NCBI GenBank assembly: GCA_000708835.1
Contig: DF237239.1
Span: 47,446 to 111,445, forward strand
Reading direction: 5' to 3'
DNA from: Klebsormidium nitens
Taxonomy: Eukaryota; Plantae; Klebsormidiophyceae
DNA: 64,000 nt
The notes beneath the pieces are model-generated. The model ran no database searches. It had not been told where the DNA came from and saw only the letters and a program-made list of their open reading frames with translations. Of this stretch, positions 7,670-40,900 are shown piece after piece (position 1 is the first letter of the stretch; the number at the start of each line of letters is the position of its first letter). The position numbers and the translations under genes are program-made.

Positions 7670-8196
7670 AGACTGCTGCAACGACAGCATTCGACAGATT
7701 GATTGTGAGAGGGGTGGACCATCCCAGTCAAAGCTCGGGGTGGTTTTCATGAGCAGGATAAGTTGGGAGTAGACGCGCAACACGGAGTGGTCACCTCACA
7801 TAGACACCGCTTTCATGACATTCCACCCAGTGATCCAAAAGGTGAGCCAGAAAGATTTGAGCACATTCAAAGCGCCAGGGTTGCCTCCTTTTATGAGCCT
7901 TTGCTGCCTGTTGCCATTCTGCGATAACTTCTACCAGTATCATGTCTTGCACAATGGCCTCGTCGCAACAAGCTAAACTGATTCACCAGGAAGCTCCACA
8001 CTTTTGCACACAGGGTTCTCAATGGTGTCATCCTGCGTGTGTACCCCCAAGCACACCAGTGCTCCCAAGCGCCAGGTTACCTGTTGCAGGAGCCCCATGA
8101 GAAGAGAACATGCTGCACCCTTTGCAACCGCGATTGACAACATGCTGTCCACCGGGGGTATAAATAGTGCTGGTTACCAGCTTTGCCATAATCACC

Positions 8197-18154: not shown

Positions 18155-19158
18155 GATCTGTCACAGCCGAAATACCTTCTCTGGTAGCAAGTAGACTGGC
18201 TCTATTTATTTTGGCTTCAGCAAAGAAGTCGTACACGAGAAACAGAGCAACTGGCGGTATCTGCTCGATATCTTGACCTCAGCTTGAAAGCAGTGCTCGG
18301 GGTCAGGATTCGGTATGCGAAAATGGTACTGCACCGGGATTTGTTGGAGTCCGTTCCGACGCGGCCACTCACAGAACAATTGTGGACTGGAGGCTAGGCT
18401 AGGCTATCATGAAGGTTTTGGAACACCATATGTACGGGCCCATCTTCTTTGTGCTAGAGGGCGTGTGAAGTTCCTACATGCTCTGGCACTGCTGGCGCCT
18501 GTTCACAATCGATTTGACAGCATCATGGCGGCAATGAGTAACCCTTGATGGATATTTTATGTCTAAGTGCGTCTATCAAAGGCACATGGGGCGATGCATG
18601 CAGGTACATTGGCAATGCATCCGGTATGCCCTAAAACTGCCCATATGAGTAGCTGGAGGTTCGCCAGTGGGATGACTCTTCCTAGAACGTGGTAATCATC
18701 ATGCAGGATCCTAACTTATATGCTAAGTTGTGCTCAGAAATTTAGTCGAGATGAAACTGCAATCCGGCCCGGCGTGGCCGCCCCACTCTTGAATCAGGAC
18801 GCTGGAACAGAAGCCAAGCACTAGACACATTGAGTAGTATAAGTCATCATAATTATAAACTTATGATCCTGACGTCCAAGAAAGACACTCGGAGCCTCCA
18901 CACGTCATGCTCCTATGATGGACCTACTAAGCATAGTCACTACTCAAAGCTGTACACTGCTGCACGTACCATGGCTGCCGTCCGATCACCTCGACGCTTA
19001 AGAGTCCAACAAATCAGTTTTTTCTCCAAGCAGGGATTGATTCAAGCACGCCTCGTTTTTACAACGCTCAATGGACGGCGCATCAAAAAACGTGGTGTCA
19101 GACGTGTGAAATGCTACCTAGATGTCAACTTCTTCTACAATAAGTGATCACCCCTCCC

Positions 19159-20791
19159 TCAAGCACTACCTCTTTCAAGCAGACTGATACGGACCTTATC
19201 AATGGCCCCTTCTGTCTGCCTCCAAGCAACCACGGACGTCCTCAAAGCTCCATACACTTCCTCCATCGTTCCCCTGCTGATGTACTGGGGAGGTGGTTGG
19301 CTCAAGACTGGTTCTGGGTTGAGTAAGCACGGCCAGAAGTTCCTATTGACGCTGCGAGCATTCTCAAACAATGCAGCAAAGTCCCTCTCCAGCTCGTCAA
19401 TCATCCTCTGAACACTGGCCTCATCTCTGGTGGCAAGGACGGAGCGCAATGGAAGAGCTGGACTGAAGTCGAAGAAGCCCGCAACTCGATCGACCATATC
19501 CTCTGGCAGCCTGGCGGTGAGCAGGCGAGAATTGTGCCAGTCTTGAAGACCACGGAGCATTTTGTACTTGAGCAGAGCCATGGCCACCAGGTGGGGCAAT
19601 GATTGGTGCCTTGATAGGAAGTAGTTGATGGGCTCCAGCGCGTTCGCTCCATTTATGTTCAGGTAGGGCAGATTCAAGTTGCCCCAATCATACCTGCCGT
19701 CCGGATCGCAAGTGGCCCACACTTCATAAAATCGTATGCTTCCTGATCTTTGCCCAAGCGTAACATCAGAAACGGCGTCTCGTCCCGTAGACCCAGGTTG
19801 TCTGAGCGGCACAACCGGAAGCAATCAAGTTCATGCTCCAGAGCACATTGCAAGGCAGGACGTGTTCCGTAGTTGCAGAGAGCTATAATCAAATCTGAGC
19901 GGGCACGCATATAGGCGCGAGTCTCATGGACGCCCCAGAAGTGGCCTACTGCCGAGTCAAACTCGTCAATAGTGCCGTCCAGTCTTGCCATGAGAGAACA
20001 GGGGGGCAGCGCTCGCAGTTTCGTTTCCTCACNNNNNNNNNNNNNNNNNNNNNNNNNNNNNNNNNNNNNNNNNNNNNNNNNNNNNNNNNNNNNNNNNNNN
20101 NNNNNNNNNNNNNNNNNNNNNNNNNNNNNNNNNNNNNNNNNNNNNNNNNNNNNNNNNNNNNNNNNNNNNNNNNNNNNNNNNNNNNNNNNNNNNNNNNNNN
20201 NNNNNNNNNNNNNNNNNNNNNNNNNNNNNNNNNNNNNNNNNNNNNNNNNNNNNNNNNNNNNNNNNNNNNNNNNNNNNNNNNNNNNNNNNNNNNNNNNNNN
20301 NNNNNNNNNNNNNNNNNNNNNNNNNNNNNNNNNNNNNNNNNNNNNNNNNNNNNNNNNNNNNNNNNNNNNNNNNNNNNNNNNNNNNNNNNNNNNNNNNNNN
20401 NNNNNNNNNNNNNNNNNNNNNNNNNNNNNNNNNNNNNNNNNNNNNNNNNNNNNNNNNNNNNNNNNNNNNNNNNNNNNNNNNNNNNNNNNNNNNNNNNNNN
20501 NNNNNNNNNNNNNNNNNNNNNNNNNNNNNNNNNNNNNNNNNNNNNNNNNNNNNNNNNNNNNNNNNNNNNNNNNNNNNNCGCTCGCAGTTTCGTTTCCTCA
20601 CGGTCGGCGCGGCCTACAGCAGCCTTGATGACATTGCAGGAAGCCTTGTGTTGCGGCCAGTCAGCTTTCTGGTGAGCTTCTGAGCAGTAATAGGTGATAC
20701 GGCAGCGCGAGCATCTGAGTTCCTCAGCAAGCTGCTTATTGCAATGTTGGCAAGTGATAGAAATGCCAGCATTGGTGACAGACTGAACCAT
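19159..20791 (-). CDS. Intronless MYND zinc-finger protein with helical C-terminal domain; split by an assembly gap and carrying a 1-nt frameshift (sequence error or pseudogene)
   Basis: MYND motif CQHC...CSRCRITYYCSEAHQKADWPQHKASC at 20630-20760. Merging the duplicated 23-mer across the gap gives an in-frame DREETKLRALPPCSLMARLDGTIDEFDSAVGHFWGVHETRAYMRAR...LCRSDNLGLRD...LRLGKDQEAYDFMK. The protein continues in another frame as WATCDPDGRYDWGNLNLPYL to the stop at 19159. AAG TG TGG near 19720 lacks one G relative to KWW. Confidence 0.8.
20033..20578. other. Assembly gap, probably spurious (flanks overlap)
   Basis: The same 23-mer cgctcgcagtttcgtttcctcac occurs at 20010-20032 and 20579-20601, and collapsing it restores the MYND reading frame. 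Confidence 0.85.
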
Positions 20792-22090
20792 GCCTGAGGG
20801 CTTTAAAACCAAAAGGGCGGTGGGCCTCTTATACTAGTTCATCAGCTGGTTCTTGTTCTTGTGTAGAGTTGGTTGAGAGACTCTTAGCCCTGAGCAGGAT
20901 TCTTCGATCAAGCTGCCAATCAGGCCAAGATGTGGAACCTCCTGCAATCCCAGCATTACATTGGCCGTGAAGGTAGACAGGCGAATGCAGCGGGATGCAG
21001 CAGACAAATAGAACCCGAGCTGCTGGGCGACCTGCTGCCAGCTGTCCCCAGGAATGCGCACACCCGTAGCCTATCCTACTCCTGCTCCTCAGCCTTGCAA
21101 GTTGCAGCCTGCTCTGCAGCCAAGCAGGGCTTTGATCTAGAACTTTGCAGCTCAGGCAAGAGAGACTCAGAGGATTCTGCGCCATAGATTTTAGATTCCT
21201 GGGAATCTCATAATCCGGAGCACCGTCCGATACATTGTCAAGTAATATTTAGCGAAGCTGGAGGTAGTTGGTCGCCCATGCATGGACATGGCTTGTCCCG
21301 GTTCGCTGCAAACCCTTGCAAGCAGCGTAATATTGGCAACGGAAGTGTTCACTATTACCTGAGCGTTCACTAAGTTTCGAAGCCCCGGGCACACAACCAA
21401 GACCTCAGCTGACCTACCCAGGTGATAGGCCCAATTGCTACATATATACAACGTTAAACGACTCGAGAAGGGATAGCGCCAATACACAGTGCATGTCCTC
21501 GCCGTCGGAATGACACTTCAGGGGTCCCCTTCCCAGCCAATTGCATTTAAATAGGTATGTGGCCGATATCAGTCAGCGGGCGAGCTGCCTTAAAGCTCAG
21601 TGATCAGTTAGGTGTAGGTAGTCTGGCACACTTGATTTGTGCACCACTGTTCGGTAGCAGCAATACCCCTAGCTGATCTGAAACAATCTAGCAATGAGGG
21701 GATGAAGAGATTGTCGGGCCATGCAATTCCTTCTACCAGTGTTGCTGATGATGCGACAGCAACGTTAGCGCCTGCAATGAGGCCAAGCTTTCAAAGACCA
21801 AGTCGGAAGCACCATCCAAAGCTTGGAGCGACAGACGCAGCCCCATCTGAAGTTCAGTAGCTGCGGGACGTGTGTCAATGGCTGCGCTAGCTCATGCACG
21901 AGCTGGCAACTGTCCTACTATTGTCGCGACTCCTGAAGTTCGGAGTGGCATGACCCAGACCTCAAACACTGTTTGTAAATTGAGCAAGCGGGGGCTACGA
22001 CCAGCTGTCCATCAACCAGCCCCCGCAGCTTAGCTGGCAGATTGCCAGGCCCCAGCCCTGCAGGCGCAAGCGGCAGCTGCAGCGCTCATA

Positions 22091-25000
22091 ATGGCGAAGG
22101 TCCACCCCTTACCCCCCCCCATGGCCGCGGCGCCTGCGCCGCGGCTGCACTCAGTGCTGAAAGCCCCACACGAGCTGTCCATGTTCAGCATCACCAAAGT
22201 TGCAAAAAAGGTGGAGCAGGGGGTGGCGTTCAAGGTGCGGAAAACGTTCTTCTCGCCCGCGACGCAGAGCGCGTCGCTGTATATATTCCAAGAAGAGGGA
22301 TGGACGAGGAAGACGTGCATTAGGATTGTGGAGCACCCGTGGTTCGAGCGCTGCGTGCTGCTGATGATTGTGGGGAGCTGCCTCACGCTGGCTATGTACG
22401 ACCCAAAGCAGCCCGCGGACTCGGACTACAATACAGCGCTCAACATTGCGGATATGGTGAGGAGCGTTCTTTGACAATTTCACGCAAACACCTTTGGTTA
22501 ACATCTGCATGTGCCTGCGAAAGAGCGGTGCTTCATGATGAAAGTATGTTTGTCATGCTACGGCCTTCTAGAAAAAGTATGAATGAATGCTCACAGTCAG
22601 CTGCAGAAGAAGCAAGGCATCCTGCATCCCTCGTCAAAAAGTCCGCTGAGAATTGTTTTTGGGTGGTAATCAATGCCACCACCTCAGCTCCTGATTGATT
22701 TTCTCCAAATCCAATGCAGGTTTTCAGCATCCTCTTTGCAATAGAAATGATACTCCGGACAATCAGCCAGTGCTTCATCTTTGCGCCAGATGCGTATCTG
22801 GCTTCCGGCTGGTAAGCCTTACTTCCCGCATCACGGTCCTTCTACCAAGAGAACCCACACCAAATGCTTTTGTGACCTTCTGAGCTTTCGCCAGAACTCT
22901 CTGATGGTTCCTGACGAGTGCATGCTTCAAGTGCTTGTCGCAGAGGCCTCTAGCAACCACCTTGATGATGCCACGCTCTATACATGCAGGCGACGCTTGG
23001 ATTTTCTCATTGTGACGGTTTCGTTCATCTCCTTTATCCCCGGGGCAAACAAGGCTGGCACGGTGCGCGTTGTTCGAGTGCTCCGGCCCCTGAAAGCAAT
23101 CAGCAACCTCAGCGGGGCGCGCATGATGGTGAGTGCCCATGCCACTCTTCCACGTTTCAAGGGTAAGCTTCATCCTTGCGGGAATCAGGAGGACGAAATG
23201 AGTTGAGGTCGACTGTGGTCCAGCACTGTCCCTGCTACTTTGATTTTGAAGTTTACATTAGCAGGAAAGAACGAGAACAGGGGGCTACAAAGAGGGGGAA
23301 TGGTCAAGGTGCTAATGAAGCATGCAAGGGAGATGGTTTCGATGGCAGTCCTGAGGAACGCTGCGAGTAGGTTTAGCTGAGCACTTCGTCCTCAGCGGAG
23401 GAGACTGCAGGGGTTGGACAATTAGAAGCCCATAACACTCGAGCAGTCCTTCCAATACAGCTTTCCAATACAGCTGACGCCCTTCATCAAGTGGATTTCA
23501 GCATCCCAGCCACGTGTCCCCGTCCATACAAGTTCTTCAATTCCTGACATAAGCATCCGGGGAATCTTTGAAACACCATCTTCTCCAAGAATTTCAGTAG
23601 GTTTTGCGACAGGCTCGTCAAGATCTTCAGGGGATGAGTCCACTAGCCTGAAGCCAAATTGAATGCATTTGTGCACTCCGTTCAAGATCTCTAGAAGATG
23701 ATCCCACTTGTTGCGGCTTCCCAGGTGACGACATTGATCGAGTCGCTGCCGTTGATGATGGACGTGGGTATTCTTATCCTGTGGCTGGTGCTCGTCTTCA
23801 GCATCATCGGCATGCAGCAGTGGCTCGGCAAAATGAGCTCCAGGTGCTTCGATGCGGTGAGGCGATCCGCCCCGGTCCAAGCCCAGGTCCCTCCTTAAAG
23901 TGAACTATAAGGGGCCTCGCAAGCGCAACCTTCATTTCCTCAAAGAAACCGTGACCTGAGATAAACATCCTGCCGATATGGCTGTACTCGGACCAGTGTC
24001 CCGCTCTAGTTGTCTTGTGCAATCGTGCGGTGCAAAGCCTTCGCAGCTGCTGACACCGTTCGGCGCAGGATATCTGCGGTAATCCGTCCAGAAAAGTTGC
24101 GATCCTCTGCAGCGGTCCTCTCTTTCGTACGCTCGATCTTATCCCCCATTCGATTTGAGAGGGGTAAAACTCTTTCTTTTGGGCGGCGGGGACAAGTGCA
24201 CTTCCCGTCGTCCCACGTTCTACCGCTTCTTTCCGATTCGGTCAGCCATTTTGCTCACCCTTTTCCTCCTCCTCCCTCCTTGAAGCAAGTCGAGACGCTC
24301 GTACTAGCAACCAGCACCAGCAGGACTGCACTTTACCCAGTATGACTCAAAACATAGCGCGCTTGCAATGCGCTCTGATAGAAGCTCCCCTGAACGGTCC
24401 AAAGAGCGACACACTGACACGTGCTATCCTTATTCTGCCTCTTTACAGAGCCACAACCTAAATCCTGATCTGGTTGACACCCCGTGCGTGGCACCCGAAC
24501 ATCAAGGTGGCCACTGTCCCGTGGATCAGGTCAGTAGTTCCACGCGCGCTTCAGGGCCTTGGCTTGCTTTCTGGATCGTTGGAATCCTACAACACTAAGA
24601 GTTCAGGCGCGTGGGCGTGTTGAGGGCGGCCTTTGTACGGTAACAAATTCAGACCAGAGGGCTTCTTGTTTGCATCTGGGTGCTCATTAATGTTGCGGGT
24701 GCTCAACTGAAGATGCTGAAATGCTAGTCTAGATCACAATCACTCGGAATACCTTCTTCGCAACCGTAGCAACAGCAGGCTGTTCCCCCTATCAACCTTT
24801 TCATGTAGCTTGACCTCTCTTGAGTTGGTGAGTGTTGACAAAAGAAGAATGATTCACGTTCTCCAAGACAAACCTTGCTTCCGTCGTATGGCGGTCGAAG
24901 TCAGAACTTATATCGCCATGGCTGCTGTCAGTGTGTTTCCAACTCCCAAAACCGCCCGCCGCATCCTAACCGACTGCGCAGGATGTTCTCGATGCTGCTC

Positions 25001-28000
25001 ACCCCGTATGCGATTCGCGGCAGAAAAGAAGCAATCCAAGCGCGGTGCTGTAATCTACTCATACAAGTAGCTCGGTTCGTGCGGTCTCCGCTAAATCTGC
25101 CCCCCCCCACCCCCCTGCTGCAGATGTGCCTGGACACGGGCCAGGACCCGGACGGCGGCTACACGTCATTCAACAACTTGGCATATGCCGCGCTGGCGGT
25201 GTTCCAGGTGCTGACCATGGTGAACTGGACGAACCTGCTGTACCAGCTGCAGGCGTCCGGCCCCGGCTGGGTGGCCATCGTGTGGTGCTTCCTGCTCATC
25301 GCCATCGGCGCGCTCTTCTCGCTCAACCTCCTCGTCGCCGTCATCGGGTGCGCGCGCGAGAACTGCGTCCCATCCACTTTTCAAAGCGTTGTCCTGGGGC
25401 TTGCTGTTTTTATTGGGCATTAAGTCGGCTCCCTGTGGTCTGGTTCGAAAGCAGTTTTTGGTGAAAAGATCCTAAAGGACTGTCTCCAAGGCCTTCCAGG
25501 CCTCTTGGTGACCTGAATTTTGCAACTCACTTATCGCCGACCAAGAGGCCTGAGATTCGCTACTCTCTGATCGCGGATTCAGTAAGCAAACAGGTTTTCC
25601 TTCCCCGAGCGGGCCCTCCTGCTAAAGGGAACGCAAGTTCGGAGCACTCGATCATTTGAGCACCGTTTCTTTGCATCCGGGTGACGACAAGCTGAATGAA
25701 GTCTTCCTGGCAACCTACTAAACCGTCTGCAAAGCCAGAAGTTCACGTTGAATATGACCTCATGCGGTCACGCCCGCCGCCCAGCCCGGGCGCTCAACCG
25801 CTGATCCCCCTCCCCCAGGTCCAAGTTCTCGCAAGAAAACATGCTGGAGAAGCGGCGCAACTACAAGTCCGGATCGCCCCAAGACGCGCTGGGGCGCAGC
25901 ACGTCGTTCCAGTTTCTGCGCAGGAAGCTGGGCAAGCGCATGTACCGGATCACCAGGAAATTGACGGCGCCGCTCTGGTGGGACATTCCGTTCAGCGCCC
26001 ACCTGCGGCGTATCGTGGCCAGCCCGCGCTTCGACAACGCCGTCATGGCCGTCATCTGCCTGCAGACCCTCCTGCTCTCGCTCGACTACTACGGTGGGGG
26101 ACCGCGCGCGCACCTCGCGGTGCCCACTTCTAAAACTCTTTCTTTGAGAACCCAAGCCGACGATTTGCACAAGGCAGTCGCTTTTTTCTTGTGAGAATGA
26201 GCCTGTTGCCGTGCTGGTTTCTCAAGCAGTCTGCTACGAAGGTGGATTCTCTTTCAAATTGGCGAAGGTTGCCCTCTCCAATAGCGTCTTGAAATATGTA
26301 GGCATGCCAGCATCCCTGGATCGCGCTGCTCGAAGGAACTTTTGATTGTACGTAAAAGTGCTCGTACTTGAGCAAGTGAACAGTCGTCCGGGTAAACGCT
26401 GCCCTTAAATTGTCTTCCTGGGACCACTCGCAACAAAGGTAATGAAAACTCAAAAGATCTGACAGTCATTTTGTTAAGACTCATTTGGCAACGCCAATCG
26501 AATCTGGACCCGTGTTGCAAACGCTACGCACGGCACCCACCCCGGACGCCTTGCCCTTGAGCTTACTAAATGCACAGCGGTCAGGAACTAATTGCTATAT
26601 ATCTAGGCATATATGCTACCTATATACTGAGCGGTAAACGCTCAATTACCCAGCCTATTTGAGACGGATACAGAAACAGTCTTTCAAAGCAACGCGCCAC
26701 ACAGCCGCTGACCCTGAGGCTGCCCCGGTGCAGGCATGAGCGAGACGGAGCGGCTGGTGATCCAGGACATCAGCTACGTCACGAGCGGCATCTTCATCCT
26801 GGAAATGGTGCTCAAGATCTGGGGCCTCACCGTGGGCGGCTACTTCGGCAGCGGCCAGAATGTGTTCGACGCCATCATTGTCATGCTCACCGTCATCGAG
26901 CTCTTCCTCTCCTCCTCCAAGCTCAAGGTGACGCAAGCAGGCCGGCTCGGAGTGTTGGATAAGAGAAGTGGCCTGACTGGACCACCAACTGTTGGGACCT
27001 GAGCTGCTGTGCAACTTGATATCACTGTCTTGTCTTTCTGGGCGCTTGTGCTTTTGATCACAGGAACGGAACTGCTGCCTTCATACCTGAGCTGTCAAGC
27101 TTTGTTTTGACACTTTCACTATGGTAAAGGCGTGGAAGCCTTGACTGGTATGATAGGCAATTCTCGGCCGTTCTGAAAGAGGACCTTGTCCAAACGGCCA
27201 CTGCTGCTCCTCCGCTTTGTTGGGCGCCATTTCTTTCTTTGAATTGAACTGTTGGGCTCTGGTTCCGCAGGCGCTGCAAGCGTTCCGGCTGCTGCGTATT
27301 CTGCGGACGGTCCGCATCTTCCGCGCGTACAAGAACTTCCGGCGGCTTATGGACTCCATCCTGCACGGCCTGGTCAGCCTGCGCGAGTTCCTGCTGCTGC
27401 TCGGCATCTGCATCTTCATCTTCGCAGTGCTCGGCATGCAGGTGGGCACGCATGAAAAACGCTTGCACTCTTCCGCCAACTTGCCAAGTTTCTGGTACGC
27501 TTCATGAACGTTGCTGCCTTGGTGGAGCGGGCGTCTGAAGAAGGGTCACAATCTGCCCCTGCTTCTTCTCGCGCACACTAAGCTATAGCAACCGAGAAAC
27601 AGAGTGCAAAGCGAACGAGTTAAGAAATAGCAGGACATGTGAGCGACTTTCTGATGACGAAGTTCGATCAATTAAATACTTCCTACACCACGCAGATCTC
27701 CCTGGATCGGTACATGATCATGAATCCGAAACCTTGGTTAAATTTAAGCTTTAGAGATCCTGATCCTGATCCTGATCCTGCAATAAGCTGTTCAATCTCA
27801 GAGGACGCTGGAGGCAGTCCATCTAGTAGAGTTCCATAGCTTTTTACAGGCATTCCACTGATCTTCGCGAAAGAACGCTTCCGTTCTTGACCGTGTTTCT
27901 TTTCGCAGCTTGATCCAGCTTGAATCAGGTCGTTATCCGTTCACTTCCACAACCATTAAACCGCTTGTCTCTCCACTTAACCTGTCCGGTTCTTGAGCGT

Positions 28001-31000
28001 GATTTATTTCCCCCCGCAGCTGTTTGGCGGCAACGTGGCATTCTCCGGGGAGCGCCAGAACTTCGACACGATGTGGATGAGCGTGCTCATCATGTTCCAG
28101 GGCCTGACCGCCACCACGTACACCCAGACCATGTGGCACGCTATGCACGCCGTCGGCTGGCCCGCGGCCGCCTACTTCGTCGCCTGGATGGTCGTTGGCA
28201 ACATCGGACTTCTCAACCTGGTCAGCCCGCCCCCGCCTAAGGGCGCTCCTTAAGAAATACTCCTTGCTTTTACTGGAAAACGTGCAGTTTCTTGGTGTGA
28301 TTATGTTTGGACGTCAGCTCTGGAACCAGTCCGCTCCGCAATCTGGCGCCCGTTGACTTCGACCGAAGGCTCATGAGGGTTGTGACACCATTTCCTTGCT
28401 TCCGTCATACCTGACGAGGGACGTCAGATATAATACTGTGCGCTGAGCAGAAATGGCCCGTTCGCGGTGCAGCTGCTGGCTATCATGATTGACCACTTCA
28501 ACAGCGACCCCACCGAGTCCGACGGCGAGCGGAGCATGAAGCGGATGACGGACGCAGGGGACGGGGGCGGCATCTTGTGAGCACGCAAAGAACTCACCTT
28601 TGCGGAACATGACCCGACGAAGGCTTACTTAACACAACCTTTGTCTTTCAACGCGTAGCTTACCTGACTATCTAGCCGAATTCGTTTCCTCGAGTGCCGC
28701 AGCCCCTTATCTGTTCTTTATTGTGTGGACCACTGTCACATGTTTCCACGTGCTTTACGCTTCTACCGCTTCGCGCTTCTTGCAAATTTTTCTGTTCCGA
28801 ACTCATTGCGAGCCGAGACATTCAAGCCATCTTCGTTCCCGACCACTTACGAGAAGCCAGGCTCACCGCCGACCTCCCCCCGCGCGTTCTGCAGCGGCAT
28901 GATCGCCAAGCGGCGGCAGCGCATTTTCGCGCACGAGGCGGAGCGCACGGCGGCGTGGCTGCGCGCGGTGGGCGAGGAGTACGTGCCCAAGAAGAAGCTG
29001 TCGTTCATCGGCCGCTTCAGCTCCACGGTGACCAAGCTGCGCGGCGTCAGCTCGTTCATGCGCAAGAAGAAGTCCGTCACCTCCAGCAACAACAGCTCCA
29101 TCACCTCGTCGGCCGCGCCGAGCGTGCACACCAGTGTCAGCAGCCGAACCCAGCGCTCGGTCACGGGCCGCACCCAGGTCGCGCGCTCGCGTCAGTCCGT
29201 GACGGGGCGCAACTTCCTGTACGCGGCCGCGAACGCGGCGGAGGCGAAGGTGGAGGCGAAGAAGAAGGAGCGAGAGGAGGCGGAGCAGGAGGTGTCGCCG
29301 TGGAAGGCGGTCGCCGCGAAGATGGGCGTCGAGAAGGTGAACAAGGCCAAGCCCAAGTCCATGGTGGCCATCCTCGCGGCGATGCAGCCCAGCAAGACGG
29401 GCGGCGATTCGCCCACGCGCGCGTGGTCGGTGGGGAAGGATCTCTCCGTCAGCCGCCGCTCGGCGTCAGTCGTCGGGCGGACCATGCTCTCTGGGGCGAC
29501 GCTATCGCCGGCCTCCCCCGGGGCAAAGCAGCGGCGGGCATCCAGCATGCTGCGCCTGCAGGTGGACGCCCCGCCGGGCCCGGCAAGCGGCCCGGCGAGC
29601 CCCCCCGACCTTTCAAGCCCCAAGAGCAGGTTCCACGCGCGGCGCGCGCACTCTGTCGCGGACATGTCGGCGCTGCGGGACCGCCTCGTGGCGCAGGCAG
29701 CCGCTGACAGGCCAAACGACACCTCACATCCGACCGTATCGTCTCACCGTGCGATCGACAACGATGGGGAATCCCCTTGGATCGGCAAGCCGCTGTCTTT
29801 GGGCAATTCTCCAGAGCCGGAGGCAGAAGGCGCGAGCGAGCGCGAGCCGCTTCTGCCGCATCTTACGGAATTCAAGATGCGGAAGGCGGGCGCGGAGGAC
29901 GGGTTACAGGGTTTGGTAACGGAGCCCGCGCAGGCGGCCGCGCCCTCCGCGATGCGCGGCGGCATGTGGCGCACGAGGTCAATGCGGAAACGAGAGACGC
30001 GGGGCAGCGCGGAGGAAGATATCGACGAAGAGGAGTGGCGGAACCTTCCGGGTGAGATGACGGAGATCTTATGCAAATCCATAGTCTTTTGATTCCACGC
30101 AGAGCTGCTCAAATTCGATGACACAGGCCACAAGGGTCAGTAAGCAGAGCCGCGCTTGATCACGAACGGCACCACCGGCACCTGGACGTCAGTGTCAACA
30201 TTCAACGCTCTCATCCATCATGCGAGGGTTCTACTTGCCGTGCCTAAGGGAGACGAGTGTCAAGGATCTGAGGCTGACCTCTGACCCTAATCACACTTCC
30301 AAAGCATCCGTCATGTTTCTGTACAGCTCCCAAACAAGCTTCCAGCCACCCATACTCGCCATGCCTCCTTGCCCAGAAAGCCTAGAAACGCCTCCGTGTA
30401 ACAGACGCCCGCCTCCCCCGCGCTTGTCCTGACGCACACGTGGCGCTCTGTGGCAGGTGCTTGCATGCCGTCCAAGCGGCAGCTGGCGCCGCTGCTGTCG
30501 TGGGAGGTCCTGCCGCCACCTGTCCCGGGCGACCTCGTGCTGCCGTACGATCTGCCGGACGAGGTCGAGGATGAGCTGGTGGTGTCCAAGGTGAGCACCG
30601 CGGACGCGGCCGCGGCCGCAGAGGCGCTTGTGGCCAGATCAACCGAAACGTTCTCGCCGGTTCGTCCGTTCCATTCATCTGTGCGGCTTCGCTGAATCTT
30701 GCTCAAAACCTGCTAGCTACGAAGTATTCCACCTACACTCCAAAGCATAGGCTTACCTAGGAGATAGCTAGGCCGCCCGCAGTGAACGCCAAACCCCTGC
30801 TCTTCCGCGCAGGCCGAGCTGCGGCGGCGCGCGGGCATCCCCAAATCGTGCGGCACGCTCATCTCCACCGCGCTGCCGAACGTCGGGCGGCAGCGCCTCG
30901 CGGGCAAGCCGGCCGCGTCGATGACGACCCAGGGTACGCGCGCGCCAACGCGCACGAAAAAGAAGGGCGACCTGAAGGTGGCGGCCAAGGCGATTGGGAG

Positions 31001-34000
31001 GGCGCTGCAGGGGCTGCTGGCGAACCCTATGGAGTCGGCCGGCTGCATGCGCTACAGGTGATTGTGCGCGCGCGCATTCTTGGTATCCATCTCGTCAGAT
31101 CGAACGATCCATGAAGCTCGTACCTGAATGCGGACATCGATTCATCTGGCACCGACCTTGAACTTAAACATGGGCTTGCTTCTCAAGCTCCCCCATCCTC
31201 ATCTCATGCCCGGAATCGGTGTTCACCATTTGCAACGCCTCGCGAGTCGTGCAAATGCGACTCAGAAAGTCTCAGATTGACCTACTGGAACCCCGGAACC
31301 GCTATATTTTCCCACTACGATTTGATACGTGTCTCCCCCAGGTCTCTCGGGTTCCTTCCGCCGACGAGCCCGTTCCGGCGCGCGCTGTTCCTGCTGGTGA
31401 GCAGCAAGGAGTACGAGTGGCTCAGCCTGATCATGGTGATCGCCAGCTGCCTCTCGCTGGCTCTGGACTCGCCGGAGCTCTCCGACACGTCACCGCTCAA
31501 GCACGCGCTCTGGTTCTCCGACATCATCTTCGCCACCTTCTTCTCCGCCGAGTGCCTCGTCAAGGTGAGCCGCCGCGGAGCCGGACTACGCAAAGTGGTC
31601 TCTTCACCTGCGGGTTTTCGGGCTTATAAAGTGATTCCAGCACTGTGTAGATTGAATCGCCGTTCAATTCGCTCGCGGCCAGGTAATAGATCTGATCATA
31701 GGCGCGCGAGCGGGTCTAGGAACTTTCAAAGGAGAGACCTCGACGTCCGCCAATCGTTGCTTCCTGACATCCTGCGCGGACAGAGAGAGCCCATCGCTAA
31801 TCTCGAAACGGCGCGCTGAGTTCAATATCCCCTAACAAGCGCCACAGATTCCCTCGCTCACAAAGGCCTCACCAGAAAGCTCGAAAAGGTTTCGTTGCAT
31901 CACTCAAGGCGAGTGGAGTCGCACGCAGCTCACCCCTCCGCCCCTGGTGCGTAGATCTTGATCATGGGCCTCTACGCGCACGAGGGCGCGTTTTTGCACA
32001 GCTCGTGGAACAAGCTGGACGTGCTGGTTACGGTCTGCAGTATCGCCGCCTGCTTCGTCAGCCCCACCCACCAGGGCGACCAAGTCAAGTCGCTCCGCTC
32101 CTTCCGCCTCCTGCGCGCGCTGCGCCCGCTGCGCATGGTCAGGTGCGCGCTCTGGCGTGCGGCCGCGGGAGGCCGCTGGCGGCCTGCACTTGCTGTTCTT
32201 CATCTCTGATCTATTCTGAGTCGAAAAGTTGGATTTAAGACCTTCTTTGAAGCAACTGAATGATCCAGCGCCGAAACGAGAGATGCGCCAGGCCTCTGAT
32301 CGGCCCCCATCTCCGGAGGCAGATTCAACGCTGCTTGTGCGTATTTCAGCTTGCCTCTACTCTTCAGGGACCAATTCTCACCATCCAAACAAAGGAGACG
32401 TACAAAGAGAGCCGATTGTGTGGGGCTCTTCTCACTGTTGATTACACGCCGGAAGCGTTCACTTACGAGCGAAGACATACCACACATCCCGGCGCAATTA
32501 CTCGCACTGGTAAAAGAAGACGAACTTATCAGGAATCAGGACTTCTCCTGAGTCCCGTTTCCGTCCTTTTTGCAGCAAGCTTAAGAACTTGCGCATGGTG
32601 ATCCTGACGCTGAGCCGCGCTCTGCCGTCTTGCATCAACGTGATTGCGCTGGGACTGTTCTTCTTCATCATCTACGGCGTGCTGGGAGTGCAGCTCTTCG
32701 CGGGCACCTTCTACAGATGCAACGATAACTCCGTGCGCTCGGTCGAGGTACGCCCGAGAGATTCATTTCATTTCTCAGGTCTTGCATCGCAGATTCTCTG
32801 CTCCTTTGAGCCGTATGTTTCTTTTTTGATCCAGCCTTGCATTCCTGTCATGTCTCAGAGGCAAAGCTGTCCCAAATTTTTTTTTGTTGACTTCTAAAAG
32901 TTGGGAAGCCTTGCAAAAATGTGCATTGAAGAAGAGCCCATCAATCCGCTTCATGTGGTTCGAAACGCCCTCTCCCCTCAACATCGATAGAACTTTCACC
33001 AATCGTACAGTAAAAGTATCTTTCAAAGCAGTTGTCGAGTCCCATTGCCAAGCGCAGAGTTCGTCTTTCCTCTCGTCATTTCAATCTCCGGTTTCTTAAA
33101 ATCTGTTAGGTTTTTTGCGTCTCTAAATCTGCGCACTGAATTTTGCAGGAGTGCGTGGGCACCTTCACGGACCCCTCCACCGGGCTGCTGGCGGATCGCG
33201 TATGGTCCAACGCGCACATAAACTTTGACAACCTGTGGTACGCAATCGTGGCCATCTTCGTAGTAGTAACGCTCGACGACTGGCCATCGCTCATGTTCCA
33301 AGCCATGGACGCGACGGGCGTCGGGAAGCAGCCGCGGCTGAACAACCAGATCTGGGCGTCCATCTACTTCATATTTTTGCTGCTCATGGGGGCGGTGTTT
33401 TGGGCGAATCTGCTGGCGGGCGTCGTGACGGACTGCTACTCCAAGCTGCCGCCCGAGGACAAGGACATGCTGTTCATCACGGAGAGCCAGAAGCGCTGGG
33501 CGCAGGCCATCAAGATGAAGCGCTACGAGAACCAGGTGTCAATGCACAAGTCCGCGCCGCCGCAGGTAACCACGGCGGGGTCGCCTGGCTCCCAAAATTA
33601 GGTTTCTCGAGTTTCGGGGTGTGATGTGAAGGAGGTGTATATTGGAAAAAAAAATTGTTTTCTTTGTGCAAGGGTGCGGAAGCTTTTTGGTGCAAACTCG
33701 TTGACACAGCACTTGGAGAGACGAATCGGATGTGAAGGCGACTTTCGACCTGTTTGCAAAGGCTCAAGGGTTGCATGTCACCTCTTTTCCAGAATCAAAA
33801 CGTGGACTTGTTGAAGGTACGTCGTTCATTTCCGCTCCGCAGTGGACTCTTTGGGCAAATCGCAGAATCGTATACCCCCGCGGCGCAGGCGAACGTGGTA
33901 CGGCGGGTCGCGTGGGCGATCGTGACGAGCAAGACGTTCGACTACGCGGTGCTGACGCTGATCATGCTCAACATTCTGCTGCTCGCGGTTCAGCACAAGG

Positions 34001-36514
34001 ACGAGGACTACGTGTGGCTGGAGATCACCCGCATCGGCAACTATATCTTCACCTACTCCTTCTGCGCGGAGCTGCTGCTCAAGCTGACCGCGCTCGGCCC
34101 GCGCAAGTACTGGGCGGACGGCTGGAACCGCTTCGATCTAGTCGTTGTCGCGGGGTCCGTCCTGGACCTCAACGTCAAAACCCTCAACATCGGCGCGCGC
34201 GTGAGTGGCTTTCGATGCTTTAGAAGCGAAGTCACTCTCAACTTTTAGGACTTTTTAAACTGGAAACTACTTCTTTCCGTCGGAGCTTGGACTGAGATTG
34301 AGACTGAGAAACTCTTGCATCGTCTGAAGACGAAACATAGCATTCCATCCCTCCAGTCTCTCTTCAATCTGAGGAACTCCAAGCAAGGGCAGGTTCCTAA
34401 CAGTCCATCCCTGGTCAGAATTCTTTCCACTACCGTCAGCTTCCAGTTTCACCACACAAAAATGAGAAAGGCTGATGGTGCACCAATTACAGTTGTCTGA
34501 TATCTGCTCAAACCCCTGAAGACCCCACCTCCCAGTCTCAAGATTCTCCTCTGAATCGAAGTAACATAAGTTCTAGGTGTGAGAAGAACAGTCCCCGAGG
34601 TAGAGCAAACCAAAAACCTAAACCGGCAATCGCCTCGGGCACCTGGAGTTCGCACCCAAGATGTTGCACGGCCAGTCTGCATTCGGGTGCGAAATTCACG
34701 GAAATCGACAATATACCACACTCCCTCTCTGGGAAACTATCGAACACTCCGTCGAAACAACATCTTCGGTGCGAGATTAAGGGGCCCGAGCCCATTATCC
34801 GCACCCCTACCCAACTTTATCCCCCAGCCTAACCCCACCCGTTTACCGAGCCATAACGTTACCTACCCATTGCTCCACCTTTCTAAACAGTAGGTATGTA
34901 GTCTCAACCGTTTCCCGCTGCCCGCCAGGTGTTTCGCCTGGGCCGTCTGTTCAAGATCATCAAGGCGAGCCGCGGGCTGCGCACTCTGGTGAACGCGTTT
35001 GTGGGTGCGCTTCCGGCCATGTTCAACGTGGGCCTGCTGTTCTTCATCATGATCTTCATCGCCGCCATTTTGGGGATGGACCTCTTCGGAACGCTCCCCG
35101 ACGGCGAGGGCATCTTCGACCACAACAACTACCGCAACGTTGGCAACTCGCTCCTCGCCTGCCTCAAGCTCTTCACCGGCGATAACTGGTGAGCCAAACT
35201 TAGCCGTCTTTAAGTAGGTTCAGAATGTTCCATAATGGTTTTGCAGCGGCTTTGTTCAATCGAAAGCTCCTGACGCGTTAACTTGTTTCCGAAGGCGTCT
35301 GCGACTCTTCTTGACTTGCAGACGCGCCTGACGGTGAGGTCTCTCAGTGCACATTCTCGTGGTCAAAAGGTAGACGGGCTCATCTCGTTTGCTTCTCGCC
35401 TTCTGATGAGCTTTATTCGACTTTCACAACTGGTCAAATCCCTCGAGCTCTGCTCCCTGTTTTTCCCTCAGAACGCCCATCTACTTCCAGACGACATGCT
35501 CGGGCAACGGCGCGAAGTTCAAGCTCTTATTGCCACAACGCCCCATCATACCACTTGCGTTCTGAGCATCTCATTCAACTCTCAAACCTGTTCTGACCCC
35601 TCGAGCTGTGCTCCCTGTTTTCCCCAGGACGCCCATCTACTTCCAGACTACGTGCTCGGGCAACGGCGCGGAGTGTTTGGTTCACATCCTGGTGCCGGTG
35701 TACGTGCTGCTCTACACGGTCATCATGCGTTTCATGCTGCTCAACCTAGTTCTCTCCGTCATCCTGGATCGCTTCACCGACTCCGCCACCTACGAGGGCC
35801 TGCTCTCCACCGACAACTTCTTCGACGTGAGCGCGGCAACCGGGCAACTCTTTCTCCCAACGAGTGCCAAGTCGTGTGCTCAATTTTAAAGACGTGTTTC
35901 GCGCATACTTTCAGGACGCTGTAGATCTTGCTATGAATATGTTGGTTCAGGGGTGAGTTGAAATTAGCAGATTGATGGAGATCAATCAGAAAAAGGGGCT
36001 GCTTCTCGACGAGGTGACGAAATCGGTTCAACTTTTGAGGAGTCAGAGACACCGCTCAGAATTGCTAGCTTGAATTTCATTAGCTTCTGCCTCGCCAAGT
36101 TGGCATCACAGCATATGAAAAACATCACTTCCCAAAGTATTGAAGATAGTGCTACCATTTTTGTAAAAGACGGTAACGATTGTCGAACGAGCGTTCACTT
36201 TGTCAGAGTTGAAGCTTCTATCTTCCGATTTTAGCCGCTTTCCCGTCCCGACTTTGCAGGCGTTGCAGCGCAAGATGCTGCTTGACGGCTTCGTCCGCAA
36301 GCTCAAGATGAAGATCCGCGGCAGCCCCAACGGGCGCACGCTCGCGCGCTCCGCCAGCGCGCGCAGCCTTCTCGAAGGGCCCTCCCAGAACCCCGTCCCC
36401 GCGGGGCTGGTCGCGTTTGCATTGAGCAAAGCCAAACAGCGCGAGCAGCAGCGCGCGACGAGCGGCCGCGAGGTCAACCGCGGGAGCGACGAAGATAGCA
36501 TGCCGTCAAGATGA
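22091..36514 (+). CDS. Four-domain (4x6TM) voltage-gated cation channel alpha subunit, Cav/Nav superfamily, about 22 exons
   Basis: Four S4 helices: TVRVVRVLRPLK (~23059), FRLLRILRTVRIFRAYK (~27283), KSLRSFRLLRALRPLR (~32087), AR|VFRLGRLFKIIK (34195|34929). Four pore loops: FQVLTMVNW (25202-25228), FQGLTATTY (28095-28121), FVVVTLDDW (33257-33283), LFTGDNW (35169-35188 plus 35628). S6 segments FSLNLLVAVI, IGLLNL|LLAIMIDHF, FWANLLAGVVTD, FMLLNLVLSVILDRF. S2-S3 motifs YLASGWRRLDF, GSGQNVFDA, LHSSWNKLDV, WADGWNRFDL. ATG at 22091, stop at 36514. Confidence 0.93.
25497..25552. repeat. Small intronic inverted repeat (13-bp perfect arms)
   Basis: caggcctcttggt (25497-25509) and accaagaggcctg (25540-25552) are exact reverse complements. 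Confidence 0.6.
34650..34845. repeat. Intronic repeat-like insertion: 17-bp inverted repeat followed by a degenerate CTAACC core
   Basis: tcgcacccaagatgttg (34650-34666) versus caacatcttcggtgcga (34758-34774), one mismatch. It is followed by ccgcacccctacccaac...cctaaccccacccgt, which resembles the cores at 1641-1697 and 55831-55886. Confidence 0.45.
35441..35682 (+). repeat. Direct duplication (~75 bp) of the intron/exon junction of the channel's domain IV pore exon
   Basis: cctcgagctctgctccctgtttttccctcag|aacgcccatctacttccagacgacatgctcgggcaacggcgcg (35441-35514) versus cctcgagctgtgctccctgttttccccag|gacgcccatctacttccagactacgtgctcgggcaacggcgcg (35599-35671). Confidence 0.9.
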
Positions 36515-37953: not shown

Positions 37954-40900
37954 CTATGGCGCTTTGGCCGCTTTGAGGCTCCTCGCGCTAATAGCGACCC
38001 CGGGCACATTCTCCGAGCTGCGAGTGGTGCTCAGCGGCGTGTGGCCCGCGGACCCAGTGGCCAGCCTCCCGCTTCCGTCTTTGGGTGTCCCCCCGGCGCG
38101 GCCTGCGAGCGGCGACTTGACACTCACGGCCGCGGCTTTGGCACTCTGCGGGGGTTCGCGGGCGGATCTGCAGCCCGAGACGAGTATTTGTAGCGGGGCG
38201 GGGCATACTGGCTAGAATGAAACATCTCAGGGCTGCCAAAAACGAACGAGTTTGACTGCCCAACAGGTGCACTGCACTCCACGTCGCCCACGAAACGCTC
38301 CACACAAGGATGTTCGCGCAGGGGGAAGGGACATGCTTGCAACTCGCAAGGTCTCTAGTCTGGTTACCAACGAGCAGAAGGCGAGCATTACAGAACTGAC
38401 AAGCAAAACGCGTGGATCGACTCGTAAGCAGGCAAATACCTCATGAGAACTATTTGGACTGACTTAGAAAGTGCTCGGCAGATCGAACGCTCACCCCGTG
38501 TCGCCGTTGTGGGTGAAGCCCAGCGGGGTGGACAGTCCGGAAAGGCCGGCCCGGCTCAGGCTGGCGGTCAGCGTCGCGTGGCGCTGCTGAAGCGCGTGAA
38601 CCTATAGCATATTGGCCAGAAAAACACTGAATACTCGTGGCGGCGCGAAAAAGATATAAAATCAGTCTCACGTCCATTGGATCTCAGGGATAGCATCAGG
38701 TTTGGTGTGTTAGTCATCCCTTGCGCAATACAGGGGAGGAATATTTCGATGTACTGACGGTGCAGCAGCTTCATTTGCGAGTGCAGATGAGTGCACGTCG
38801 CTTCTTGGTAATCGATTGGTAGCGTCGACGCTTCTTGTAGATGGCCGTTGTAAATCGGGAAAAAGTTAAGCTAACAAGTGACATCTCAATCTGCCCGCGC
38901 GCGCCCACCTTTTCTGTGAGCGACTCCGCGAGCTCTTTCTGCGCGGCCACGTCGCTCAGCAGCTCCGGCTGCGTGATGAGCCCGCTGGCCAGCTTCAGGT
39001 TCTTGGTCTCTGTCATCGCCGCGTCGCGCGCGCGCTTCGCGCGCTGCAGCCGGTCCCGCCGCTCCGCCACCTCCCGCTCCAAGCTCTCCAGCAGCAAGCC
39101 CTCCGCCTGCGCGGTTGAGAGAGCTTTTCGTGACAGACCGAAATCAAAGCAACGGTGGCTTTATCCACCAGCGTGCCGGTAAGGCTGTCTTGCCTTCTGA
39201 CGGCATAATCTAGCCTGTTTCCTCGTCAAGGGCGCCTCCATTTTGTACACGGACTGTCTCTCCGCTATCTGCATTCATACTCGAAGCGTCATCTTTTGAA
39301 CCCCGTCCTTCCATCGTGCGGAGGCTTTTCAGCTATTGTCGTTGCGAGAAAATGCTCTCGATGTGCGGCCTCTTCCTGAGCACGGCCTGAGAGACCCAGG
39401 AATCTCAGTTTTCGCACTAATGCTAACAGTAATGCTACGCAAAGAGATTCATCCGCCGATCCAATCGAGATCCGGAAACTTTGTTCCGCCAGTCTACATG
39501 AAAAGAGACCTCCAACCACCAGCACTTCCGCGGTAGACAGTTGGCAGTAATCTTGGGTCCAAGAGCAAGTTAACAAAGATAAGATAGTGAGACGACAGGG
39601 GCGGCGGGCGGCACCTCGGCGTCGCGGTGGACGTGTTGCAGCTTCTCCTTCTGGTGCGTCAAAATGTGCACCGTCGTGCACACCTTCTTGCGCAGCTTCG
39701 CCAGCTCCTCGTCGCGCACCTTCACCTGCGCCCACCGCGCGGCGCCGCGCGTCACAAACGCGGACCAGATTCGCCGGCCAGACTAACGCTTCTATATTTC
39801 CGACTTCCAGAACGAACTTGCCAACACGCTAGAATGATATAGGAAGAAACGAAAGCACGTCGGGTTTCCCTCAACCCGGACTGAACGAGGAATCTGCGCA
39901 GCTTCTGAAGTTGGAATGATCTCTAACAATCAAAGCGTGTCGCTTGTGCCGCAGAAGCAAACGGCAACCCGCCGGCAGGGCTGGCGGATGTGTGAGGTGG
40001 CCCGCAAGATTAAGAGAAAACATAATCACCCCTCTTGAAACCGTTCTGTTTGACATCCGCACTCTGTTCGTGAGGACTGATTCTCCAACACAATCCATCT
40101 TCAGACTCGGTCCGGCCGCACCTTCTCTGAGAGCGACTGGTTCTCGATCTTGAGCTGCTCGAAGTCGACTTGGTGCAGGCCGTCCGCGAGCTCCTCTTTG
40201 CGCTTGAGCGCGCGCTCCAGCCCCGTCAGCGTGTTCTTCAGAATGATGCTCTTCAGCCGCACCGCCTCCACCTCCTCGTCCTTGGCGCGCCCCGTCGCGT
40301 CCAGCTGCGCGCGCAGACGGTGTTAAACATTGGTTTGAAACCCTAAAACCTTTCAACTCTTTATTTGACGAGATTCTACTTTCAAAGCTTTTTGAGTTAT
40401 GAAACGGGCGGTAAGCGTAAAAAAAGAATCGTGTGCTCCCAGATATGTCCAGATGAGTGAAACACAAGGAGACGTCGAAAACGTGTGGTGGACCGAGTTT
40501 CTGCGCACGTCTATGTGTCCTTACATCAAACAGGTTGCTGGCACTGGTTCGCATATTATAAAAGGAATCCTTCACAGATCAAGCGAGTGCCACCATCAAA
40601 GTACGGCCTTGCTCCAGGGCGTACCTGGCGCAGGTGTTTCGTGGGGATCCCCCGACCGGTGCGGCTGTTCTCTGCCTCGCGCGCGACCTCCATCTCGAGC
40701 TGCAGGTAGTTGCTGCGGATCTGCGCCGCGCTGTCCTGGCGCGCCTGCAGCTCGTCCTTGGCGCGCTCGATGGCGCCGTCGAAGTGTGCGCTCACGCGCC
40801 GCAGTTCCTCCGCGCCCCCCACCCACTGCTGCAAACTCTGCACGCCGGGAAGAAGGGGTAAACGCTTTCACTTTGTTGACCCGAAGAAAGTTGGTAATAG

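What the first reader, a model, noticed from the sequence alone, without database searches (positions are those of the whole stretch)
25202..35630. Four-domain voltage-gated channel with a highly atypical V/T/D/D selectivity-filter ring
Seen: aligning each pore loop on the T-x-[E]-x-W motif gives TM[V]NW (codon 25220), TA[T]TY (28113), TL[D]DW (33275) and TG[D]NW (35181). Domain II also lacks the +1 Asp and has Tyr in place of the conserved Trp. Established: known rings are EEEE (HVA Cav), EEDD (Cav3), DEKA (Nav1), DEEA (Nav2) and EEKE (NALCN), and that ring sets ion selectivity. All four S4 helices keep 4-6 regularly spaced basic residues and I found no stops in the spliced frame, so the gene does not look decayed. 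Inference: a channel class with two uncharged filter positions, possibly non-selective, monovalent-permeable, or a non-conducting voltage sensor. I know of no described channel with this ring but cannot search to confirm.
Basis: partly seen in the sequence, partly recalled or inferred. Interest (0 to 1): 0.85.

Follow-up and report, generated by a model that had tools for sequence, protein, structure and literature searches.

The report
Algal voltage-gated channel, half-neutral filter
This green alga has an intact, transcribed gene for a four-repeat voltage-gated ion channel in which two of the four usually acidic pore residues are uncharged. The same trait occurs in a wider group of green-algal channels, so it is a real but untested variant, not a one-off or a dead gene.

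Summary
Profile alignments to solved Cav3, Cav1 and Nav structures put V and T on the Glu positions of domains I and II.

I rebuilt the gene: 22 exons, 22091-36514, 1846 aa, all introns GT-AG, no stop. Spliced contigs from four public runs of one study cover exons 4-12, both odd pore exons included, with no differing letter.

Two related genomes have the same gene with the ring kept (V/T/D/D in one; the T and first D in a partial one). dN/dS is 0.14-0.22 in the membrane domains and 0.03-0.38 in the pore loops, so the gene is not decaying. The window holds no alternative pore exon.

The ring is not isolated. In trees the protein sits in a strongly supported green-algal clade (Pycnococcus, Myrmecia, Trebouxia, many metagenome sequences). 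Its rings are E/E/D/D, E/S/D/D, S/S/D/D, Q/A/D/D, R/S/D/D and R/D/D/D. Loss of the domain I/II acids is therefore a recurring trait there.

The channel also has a Nav-type LFIT inactivation motif.

Ion selectivity is untested; weak Ca2+ selectivity is my inference. First-stage notes (unchecked) report other four-domain channels with odd filters elsewhere in this genome.

The parts
22091..36514 (+). Whole coding span of the four-domain channel gene: 22 exons, 1846 codons plus stop. Exons: 22091-22456, 22720-22811, 22990-23128, 23725-23856, 24449-24529, 25124-25347, 25819-26093, 26734-26927, 27271-27441, 28020-28220, 28473-28576, 28895-30051, 30457-30590, 30813-31057, 31342-31564, 31955-32142, 32576-32747, 33149-33565, 33889-34200, 34929-35188, 35628-35826, 36260-36514.
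   Evidence: Exons 4-12 come from spliced RNA contigs. The others come from GT-AG sites conserved in the orthologous loci L003/L001 and L002. The frame is open. The exonic share predicted for 24800-34700 is 0.41; the runs hold 0.37-0.40 of the sampled words.
25124..25347 (+). Exon 6: domain I pore loop and S6. Filter codon V303 at 25220-25222 (motif TMVNW).
   Evidence: The motif is identical in orthologue B.
28020..28220 (+). Exon 10: domain II pore loop and S6. Filter codon T590 at 28113-28115; the +1 position is T591 and Tyr replaces the pore Trp (motif TATTY).
   Evidence: TATTY is kept in orthologues B and C.
33149..33565 (+). Exon 18: domain III pore loop, S6 and III-IV linker. Filter codon D1409 at 33275-33277 (motif TLDDW). 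Nav-type hinged-lid motif LFIT at 33470-33481.
34929..35188 (+). Exon 20: domain IV S4, S5 and pore loop. Filter codon D1694 at 35181-35183 (motif TGDNW, as in Cav3).
23060..23122 (+). Domain I S4 voltage sensor (R-x-x-R-x-x-R-x-x-K).
27274..27345 (+). Domain II S4 voltage sensor.
32084..32594 (+). Domain III S4 voltage sensor, split by intron 16 (32084-32142 and 32576-32594).
34192..34982 (+). Domain IV S4 voltage sensor, split by intron 19 (34192-34200 and 34929-34982).

Best explanation
The locus is a working gene for a four-domain (4 x 6 TM) voltage-gated cation channel. It belongs to a green-lineage clade with Asp in the domain III and IV filter positions, as in T-type Cav3 channels, and with a Nav-type hydrophobic inactivation motif in the III-IV linker (shown). 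In this clade the acidic filter residues of domains I and II have been replaced several times; V/T/D/D is the Klebsormidium version and is held by selection (shown). Four charged S4 helices should open the pore on depolarisation, and the LFIT motif should close it quickly (inferred from homology). The only acidic residues near the filter are D1409, D1410 and D1694, all on the domain III/IV side, and the domain II 'beacon' Asp is missing. The pore should therefore bind Ca2+ weakly and pass a mixed cation current, not a Ca2+-selective one (inferred, not tested).
For: Transcription and splicing: contigs of runs X1-X4 join exons 4-12 at GT..AG sites with no differing letters, and they use the V and T pore exons. 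Their word share of 0.37-0.40 matches the exonic share of 0.41 in my model. Integrity: 1846 codons without a stop. All eight core extracellular cysteines named in PMC4436565 are present (read from the translation). An Asn is kept in every S6. Selection: orthologue B has the same 22 exons and V/T/D/D; orthologue C keeps TATTY and TLDDW. dN/dS in the four domains is 0.14 (A-B) and 0.22 (A-C), and in the pore loops 0.03-0.17, with one small-sample A-B value for domain II at 0.38. Clade: support is 100* in FastTree (7 rows) and in IQ-TREE (16 rows). Named members are Pycnococcus (Q/A/D/D), Myrmecia (E/S/D/D, S/S/D/D) and Trebouxia (E/E/D/D). Inactivation motif: DKDMLFITESQKRW aligns with Nav1 GQDIFMTEEQKKY and Nav2 MFLTESQKHY, while Cav3 has nothing comparable. 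Selectivity reasoning: neutralising the domain II +1 Asp turns Cav3 channels sodium-permeable (PMC10120453); the ring residues set selectivity (PMC5824947, PMC4436565).
Against: No current has been measured for any member of this clade. Residues outside the ring and pore geometry also shape selectivity (PMC4436565, PMC10120453), so a prediction from the ring alone can fail. A Val at the narrowest point has no studied precedent and might hinder conduction. The RNA evidence is assembled contigs from one study, which drop rare isoforms. I could lay them on only 5.9 kb, so splicing in domains III and IV rests on conservation. The name Klebsormidium nitens comes from earlier scan notes and I did not verify it.
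Confidence: 0.6

Rival explanations
1. The channel is still effectively Ca2+-selective. The three Asp on the domain III/IV side (D1409, D1410, D1694), together with backbone carbonyls, form a sufficient divalent site. On this view the change in domains I and II tunes conductance or block, not selectivity.
For: Domain III has Asp at both the filter and the +1 position. DIII-D and DIV-D are nearly invariant across the clade. T-type channels with EEDD already range from Ca2+-selective to Na+-permeable depending on features outside the ring (PMC4436565).
Against: In the channels studied so far, every Ca2+-selective four-domain channel listed in PMC10120453 has an acidic ring plus a beacon Asp in domain II or IV. 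Here both beacon positions are neutral (T591, N1695).
Confidence: 0.2
2. The pore no longer conducts. The protein works as a voltage sensor or scaffold that signals to partners, as non-conducting CaV1.1 variants do in some fish muscle (from my own knowledge).
For: A hydrophobic Val sits at the constriction and two acids are lost. The voltage sensors are intact.
Against: The pore loops are the most strongly conserved parts: dN/dS is 0.03-0.17 in most pore-loop comparisons against 0.28-0.38 in the II-III linker. The S6 Asn residues, the core cysteines and the inactivation motif are all kept. That is not expected if permeation were dispensable. Clade members with polar Q/S/A at the same sites suggest a functional pore.
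Confidence: 0.1
3. The odd ring is not what the cell uses: rare isoforms with other pore exons, or RNA editing, restore acidic residues.
For: Contigs cannot exclude rare variants (wording). This genome is reported to hold duplicated pore exons in a CNGC gene (earlier notes; unchecked).
Against: tblastn of both pore exons against the whole window finds only the four known pore exons. The contigs show no differing letter. Orthologues keep V and T in the genome.
Confidence: 0.03
4. It is a decaying gene copy or an assembly artefact.
For: None found. An N gap lies 1.5 kb upstream of the start codon.
Against: The frame is open and all 21 introns are GT-AG. The gene is transcribed. Exon structure is conserved in two other genomes and dN/dS is well below 1.
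Confidence: 0.02

Closest known systems
Green-algal clade of four-domain channels: Pycnococcus provasolii XRA99340.1, Pseudoscourfieldia marina XRB13810.1, [Myrmecia] bisecta KAK9829920.1 and KAK9823223.1, Trebouxia sp. KAL0023530.1, and many marine metagenome sequences
   Same: They form one clade with the window protein, with top support in three trees. Shared features: Asp in domains III and IV, mostly non-acidic domain I/II filter positions, a hydrophobic-x-T motif in the III-IV linker, and a C-terminal RKMLLD motif.
   Different: Identity to the window protein is only 30-39%, and the Klebsormidium stem branch is long (about 1 change per site). Only Klebsormidium has a hydrophobic Val in domain I, Thr in domain II and Tyr for the domain II pore Trp. 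None of these proteins has been studied functionally as far as I could find. Part of the clade may be the prasinophyte group with Arg/His rings (WSC XXIX) of PMC5824947, but I could not link them by accession.
Animal and choanoflagellate T-type (Cav3, low-voltage-activated) calcium channels
   Same: They are the best matches among solved structures for all pore exons tested. The domain IV motif TGDNW is identical, and domains III and IV carry Asp. FastTree places both in one 46-row group (95*).
   Different: Cav3 is E/E/D/D in every known animal, with Asp at the domain II +1 position (PMC4436565, PMC10120453). Here the ring is V/T/D/D with Thr at +1. Cav3 lacks the Nav-type III-IV motif found here. 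The sister relation is not resolved in the IQ-TREE runs.
Nav1/Nav2 sodium channels (DEKA / DEEA rings)
   Same: Both have an asymmetric filter with uncharged positions. The III-IV linker motif LFIT-ESQKRW aligns with IFMT-EEQKKY.
   Different: In Nav the acids sit in domains I and II and the neutral or basic residues in III and IV, the reverse of this channel. There is no Lys here. They are not close in the trees.
Other protist four-domain channels with unusual rings (Paramecium E/S/L/L, Chlamydomonas T/E/N/D, and others) described in PMC5824947
   Same: They show that non-acidic and even hydrophobic filter residues occur in natural four-domain channels. Their selectivity is likewise unknown.
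   Different: They are different clades with different rings. That survey holds no streptophyte sequence.

Membership tests
[quoted passage not shown] | Four tandem Ion_trans (PF00520) repeats in one polypeptide | tested here: met
   Four domains align with all four repeats of Cav and Nav structures. ORFs over the orthologue's exons carry PF00520 marks. The spliced protein of 1846 aa holds four pore loops.
[quoted passage not shown] | Arg/Lys at every third position in S4 of each domain | tested here: met
   Domain I has R-R-R-K plus one distal R; domains II-IV have 6 or more basic residues each.
[quoted passage not shown] | Eight core extracellular cysteines: 4 in DI S5-P, 2 in DIII S5-P, 2 in DIV P-S6 (PMC4436565) | tested here: met
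   Read directly from the translation: four Cys between S5 and the pore helix of domain I, two in domain III (YRC...EEC), two in domain IV (TTC...AEC).
Cav3 / T-type (LVA) calcium channels | E/E/D/D filter ring | tested here: not met
   The ring is V/T/D/D.
Cav3 / T-type (LVA) calcium channels | Asp at the domain II filter +1 ('beacon') position | tested here: not met
   The position is T591.
Cav3 / T-type (LVA) calcium channels | Phylogenetic position inside or sister to Cav3 | tested here: inconclusive
   FastTree gives one 95* group. The deep nodes are unresolved in IQ-TREE.
Cav3 / T-type (LVA) calcium channels | Helix-loop-helix gating brake in the proximal I-II linker | not tested
   The I-II linker is short (about 55 aa) and basic. 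I made no structural or profile test.
Green-algal x/x/D/D clade (unnamed) | Monophyly with the Pycnococcus, Myrmecia and Trebouxia channels | tested here: met
   100*.
Green-algal x/x/D/D clade (unnamed) | Asp in the domain III and IV filter positions, with domains I/II variable and mostly non-acidic | tested here: met
Nav-type fast inactivation | Three hydrophobic residues followed by T/S in the III-IV linker (PMC5824947) | tested here: met
   LFIT at aa 1474-1477 aligns with IFMT of Nav1 and is invariant in the three orthologues. Whether it inactivates the channel cannot be tested here.

The most novel reading that the evidence does not exclude
The green lineage, including a streptophyte close to the land-plant stem, keeps a distinct functional class of voltage-gated four-domain channels. 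These would be fast-inactivating, with a half-neutral filter that makes them monovalent-permeable or non-selective. That would be an independent, plant-side route away from Ca2+ selectivity, parallel to the animal Nav invention. V/T/D/D would be its most extreme form.
Probability: 0.3. Interest if true: 0.7.

Novelty: new variant of a known kind. Interest (0 to 1): 0.5.

Why it matters
Land plants are reported to have lost four-domain voltage-gated channels (PMC5824947, PMC6509283), and no streptophyte is in the published survey of their filter rings. Here a streptophyte alga has an expressed, selectively maintained member. Its filter has lost the two acids that Ca2+ selectivity depends on in studied channels, and it keeps a Nav-like inactivation motif.

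With its chlorophyte relatives it gives a natural series: E/E/D/D, E/S/D/D, S/S/D/D, Q/A/D/D, R/S/D/D, V/T/D/D. Electrophysiology on this series could show how much of the ring a four-domain pore needs. It could also show what kind of electrical signalling the algal ancestors of plants had.

Tried and rejected
- I could not retrieve an annotated Klebsormidium protein for this gene. The spliced protein has no reference, so I did not hand it to the search tools or the structure predictor.
- A profile of seven clade members and a single-sequence search were both capped at 8000 candidates and swamped by animal channels. They returned clade members but no Klebsormidium entry.
- MAFFT on 125 full-length proteins timed out. 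I cut the proteins into four domain segments instead.
- A PDB search with the 55-aa III-IV linker alone found nothing. A local phmmer against Nav and Cav sequences already fetched gave the alignment.
- Rfam found nothing in the window.
- Paper searches for Klebsormidium plus channel terms found no description of these genes. The supplement of PMC5824947 lists no streptophyte.
- The filter rings in that paper are in a figure that is not held, so I could not check whether Q/A/D/D-type rings are printed there.
- My first ring extraction was off by one residue; I corrected it. Some row labels in the tree still carry the -1 residues. The topology is unaffected.
- I considered and rejected pseudogene, assembly error, misalignment and mutually exclusive pore exons (see rivals).

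Full report
**What is at the coordinates**

The + strand between about 22.0 and 36.5 kb holds many short open frames that match ion-channel transmembrane segments. phmmer of three pore-exon translations against all PDB chains gives T-type Cav3 channels as best hits (E = 5e-18, 4e-06 and 1.5e-35), followed by Cav1/Cav2 and Nav.

The alignments have no gaps around the filter:
- Domain I FQVLTMVNW lies on Cav3 FQVITLEGW.
- Domain II FQGLTATTY lies on FQILTQEDW.
- Domain III VVVTLDDW lies on LASKDGW.
- Domain IV FTGDNW is the Cav3 motif itself.

No Asp or Glu lies within 12 residues of the filter position in domains I and II. The lack of acids there does not depend on the alignment register.

**Gene model and transcription**

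One search for sequencing runs found four runs of one study that hold 0.37-0.40 of the sampled words of 24800-34700. Laid on 23600-29500, their contigs skip eight intervals, each bounded by GT..AG, and show no differing letter. The joined pieces give an open frame of 663 codons that contains both unusual pore exons. Contigs without introns can only come from RNA, so the gene is transcribed and spliced as read.

I placed the remaining junctions by aligning the window to two orthologous genomic loci and requiring conserved GT/AG sites and a continuous frame. The loci were fetched through two exon-sized database proteins: L001/L003 from one sample and L002 from another.

The result is 22 exons, 22091-36514, 1846 codons, 21 GT-AG introns and no internal stop. 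The model predicts that 0.41 of 24800-34700 is exonic, matching the word share held by the runs. One contig of 6582 nt is long enough for the whole 5541-nt coding sequence.

Splicing of exons 13-22 was not seen directly, because only one 6-kb lay was allowed.

**Is the gene under selection?**

- Orthologue B (L003 plus L001) has the same 22 exons with conserved splice sites. Length changes occur only in multiples of three, and it encodes TMVNW / TATTY / TLDDW / TGDNW.
- Orthologue C (L002) is partial, from domain II S2 to domain IV S3. It keeps TATTY and TLDDW.
- Nei-Gojobori estimates for the whole gene: dS 0.30 and dN/dS 0.20 for A-B; dS 0.55 and dN/dS 0.30 for A-C.
- By region, dN/dS is 0.14 and 0.22 in the four membrane domains and 0.28-0.38 in the long II-III linker.
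- In the 41-residue pore-loop windows it is 0.03-0.17 for five of the six comparisons. The sixth, domain II in A-B, is 0.38 and rests on two changes.

The pore is thus among the best-conserved parts of the protein. tblastn of both odd pore exons against the whole window finds no extra copy, so there are no mutually exclusive alternatives here.

**Other functional marks**

- All four S4 helices keep basic residues at every third position.
- Every S6 keeps its Asn.
- The eight extracellular cysteines said to be shared by all 4 x 6 TM channels (PMC4436565) are present (translation).
- The III-IV linker reads DKDMLFITESQKRW. This aligns with GQDIFMTEEQKKY of Nav1 and MFLTESQKHY of Nav2, whereas Cav3 sequences have no counterpart. 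The motif is invariant in the three orthologues.

The channel therefore combines a Cav3-like domain III/IV filter half, a Nav-like inactivation particle, and neutral domain I/II filter positions.

**Relatives**

An exhaustive HMMER scan with the domain III exon found only two close proteins, the exon fragments of orthologues B and C. After them identity falls to 26-40%.

I read the filter ring of every four-domain hit by local alignment to the window's pore loops. Of 124 hits, 51 are E/E/E/E and 18 are E/E/D/D; 14 hits have two or fewer acids, and none is V/T/D/D.

The trees place the window protein as follows:
- FastTree puts it in a 100* clade with R/D/D/D, R/S/D/D, Q/A/D/D, E/S/D/D and Q/S/D/D sequences, inside a 95* group that also holds the Cav3-type E/E/D/D channels.
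- With further members added, IQ-TREE recovers a 16-row clade at 100*. The link to Cav3 is not resolved there.

Named members are all chlorophyte green algae:
- Pycnococcus provasolii and Pseudoscourfieldia marina: Q/A/D/D
- [Myrmecia] bisecta: E/S/D/D and S/S/D/D
- Trebouxia sp.: E/E/D/D, pieced from two near-identical proteins

Within subclades the ring is stable: Q/A over 47-82% identity, R/S or R/D in another group, V/T in the three Klebsormidium-type genomes. Between subclades it differs. An E/E/D/D member inside the clade suggests that the neutral domain I/II residues are derived, and derived more than once. I did not root the tree or test this formally.

**What is known**

PMC5824947 surveyed 277 four-domain channels. 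[quoted passage not shown] It includes no streptophyte and found none in embryophytes.

PMC4436565 states that all known Cav3 channels are E/E/D/D. PMC10120453 shows that neutralising the domain II +1 Asp makes Cav3 channels sodium-permeable.

I found no paper on Klebsormidium four-domain channels. Earlier notes of this scan name the genome as Klebsormidium nitens and list other four-domain channel genes with odd filters (E/Y/E/E) elsewhere in it. I did not check either point.

**Mechanism**

Shown: the gene is intact, expressed and constrained; the voltage sensors are charged; an inactivation motif is present; and the only acids near the filter are D1409, D1410 and D1694.

Inferred: it is a depolarisation-activated, fast-inactivating cation channel with a weak-field, one-sided filter that binds Ca2+ poorly. 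It would therefore pass monovalent and divalent cations with little discrimination.

The main rival is that the three Asp still give useful Ca2+ selectivity. A non-conducting sensor is less likely given the tight conservation of the pore loops. Only electrophysiology can decide.

**Verdict**

The ring is a new variant, but of a pattern shared by a green-algal clade and within a family already known for ring diversity.

Noticed in passing
window 35440-35520 versus 35600-35680: Intron 20 holds a partial tandem copy of the acceptor region and first ~16 codons of exon 21 (true exon start 35628). The copy has its own CAG and a near-identical reading (TPIYFQTTCSGNGA). It is absent from the orthologous locus L001. 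If spliced, it would add out-of-context sequence.
   Followed up: partly
window 33470-33481: A Nav-type hinged-lid motif (LFIT, followed by ESQKRW) sits in the III-IV linker of a channel whose pore is otherwise Cav3-like. It is invariant in three orthologues, and relatives in the clade have VFIT, MVFT or VMLT.
   Followed up: yes
window about 21300-22090: The RNA contigs reach 1271-1381 nt upstream of 23724, which is 670-780 nt beyond the ATG at 22091. This means either a long 5' UTR (the block 21716-22465 is 80% conserved with L003) or an unseen upstream exon. An in-frame stop at 22031 precedes the ATG.
   Followed up: no
window 38868-40313, minus strand: The next gene downstream matches the CCDC113/CCDC96 coiled-coil family (PF13870, marked on the orthologous ORFs of L001). 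That family is tied to cilia and flagella, and it lies beside a channel type that is flagellar in Chlamydomonas. This may be coincidence.
   Followed up: no
window 20000-20700: There is a run of 701 N (assembly gap) between a zf-MYND gene on the minus strand (19152-19967) and the channel gene. A protein kinase gene lies at about 14-18 kb.
   Followed up: no
L002:1876-2076 (orthologue C, domain II pore exon): The most distant orthologue keeps TATTY but has gained two acids nearby (MFDGLTATTYTETMW against MFQGLTATTYTQTMW), at -5 and +4 of the filter position. This may partly compensate the charge in the outer vestibule.
   Followed up: no
proteins P0286 and P0289 (Trebouxia sp. C0005 / C0004): P0289 is a four-domain channel but is named 'mitochondrial thiamine pyrophosphate transporter' in its source record, probably a fused or mislabelled gene model.
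   Followed up: no
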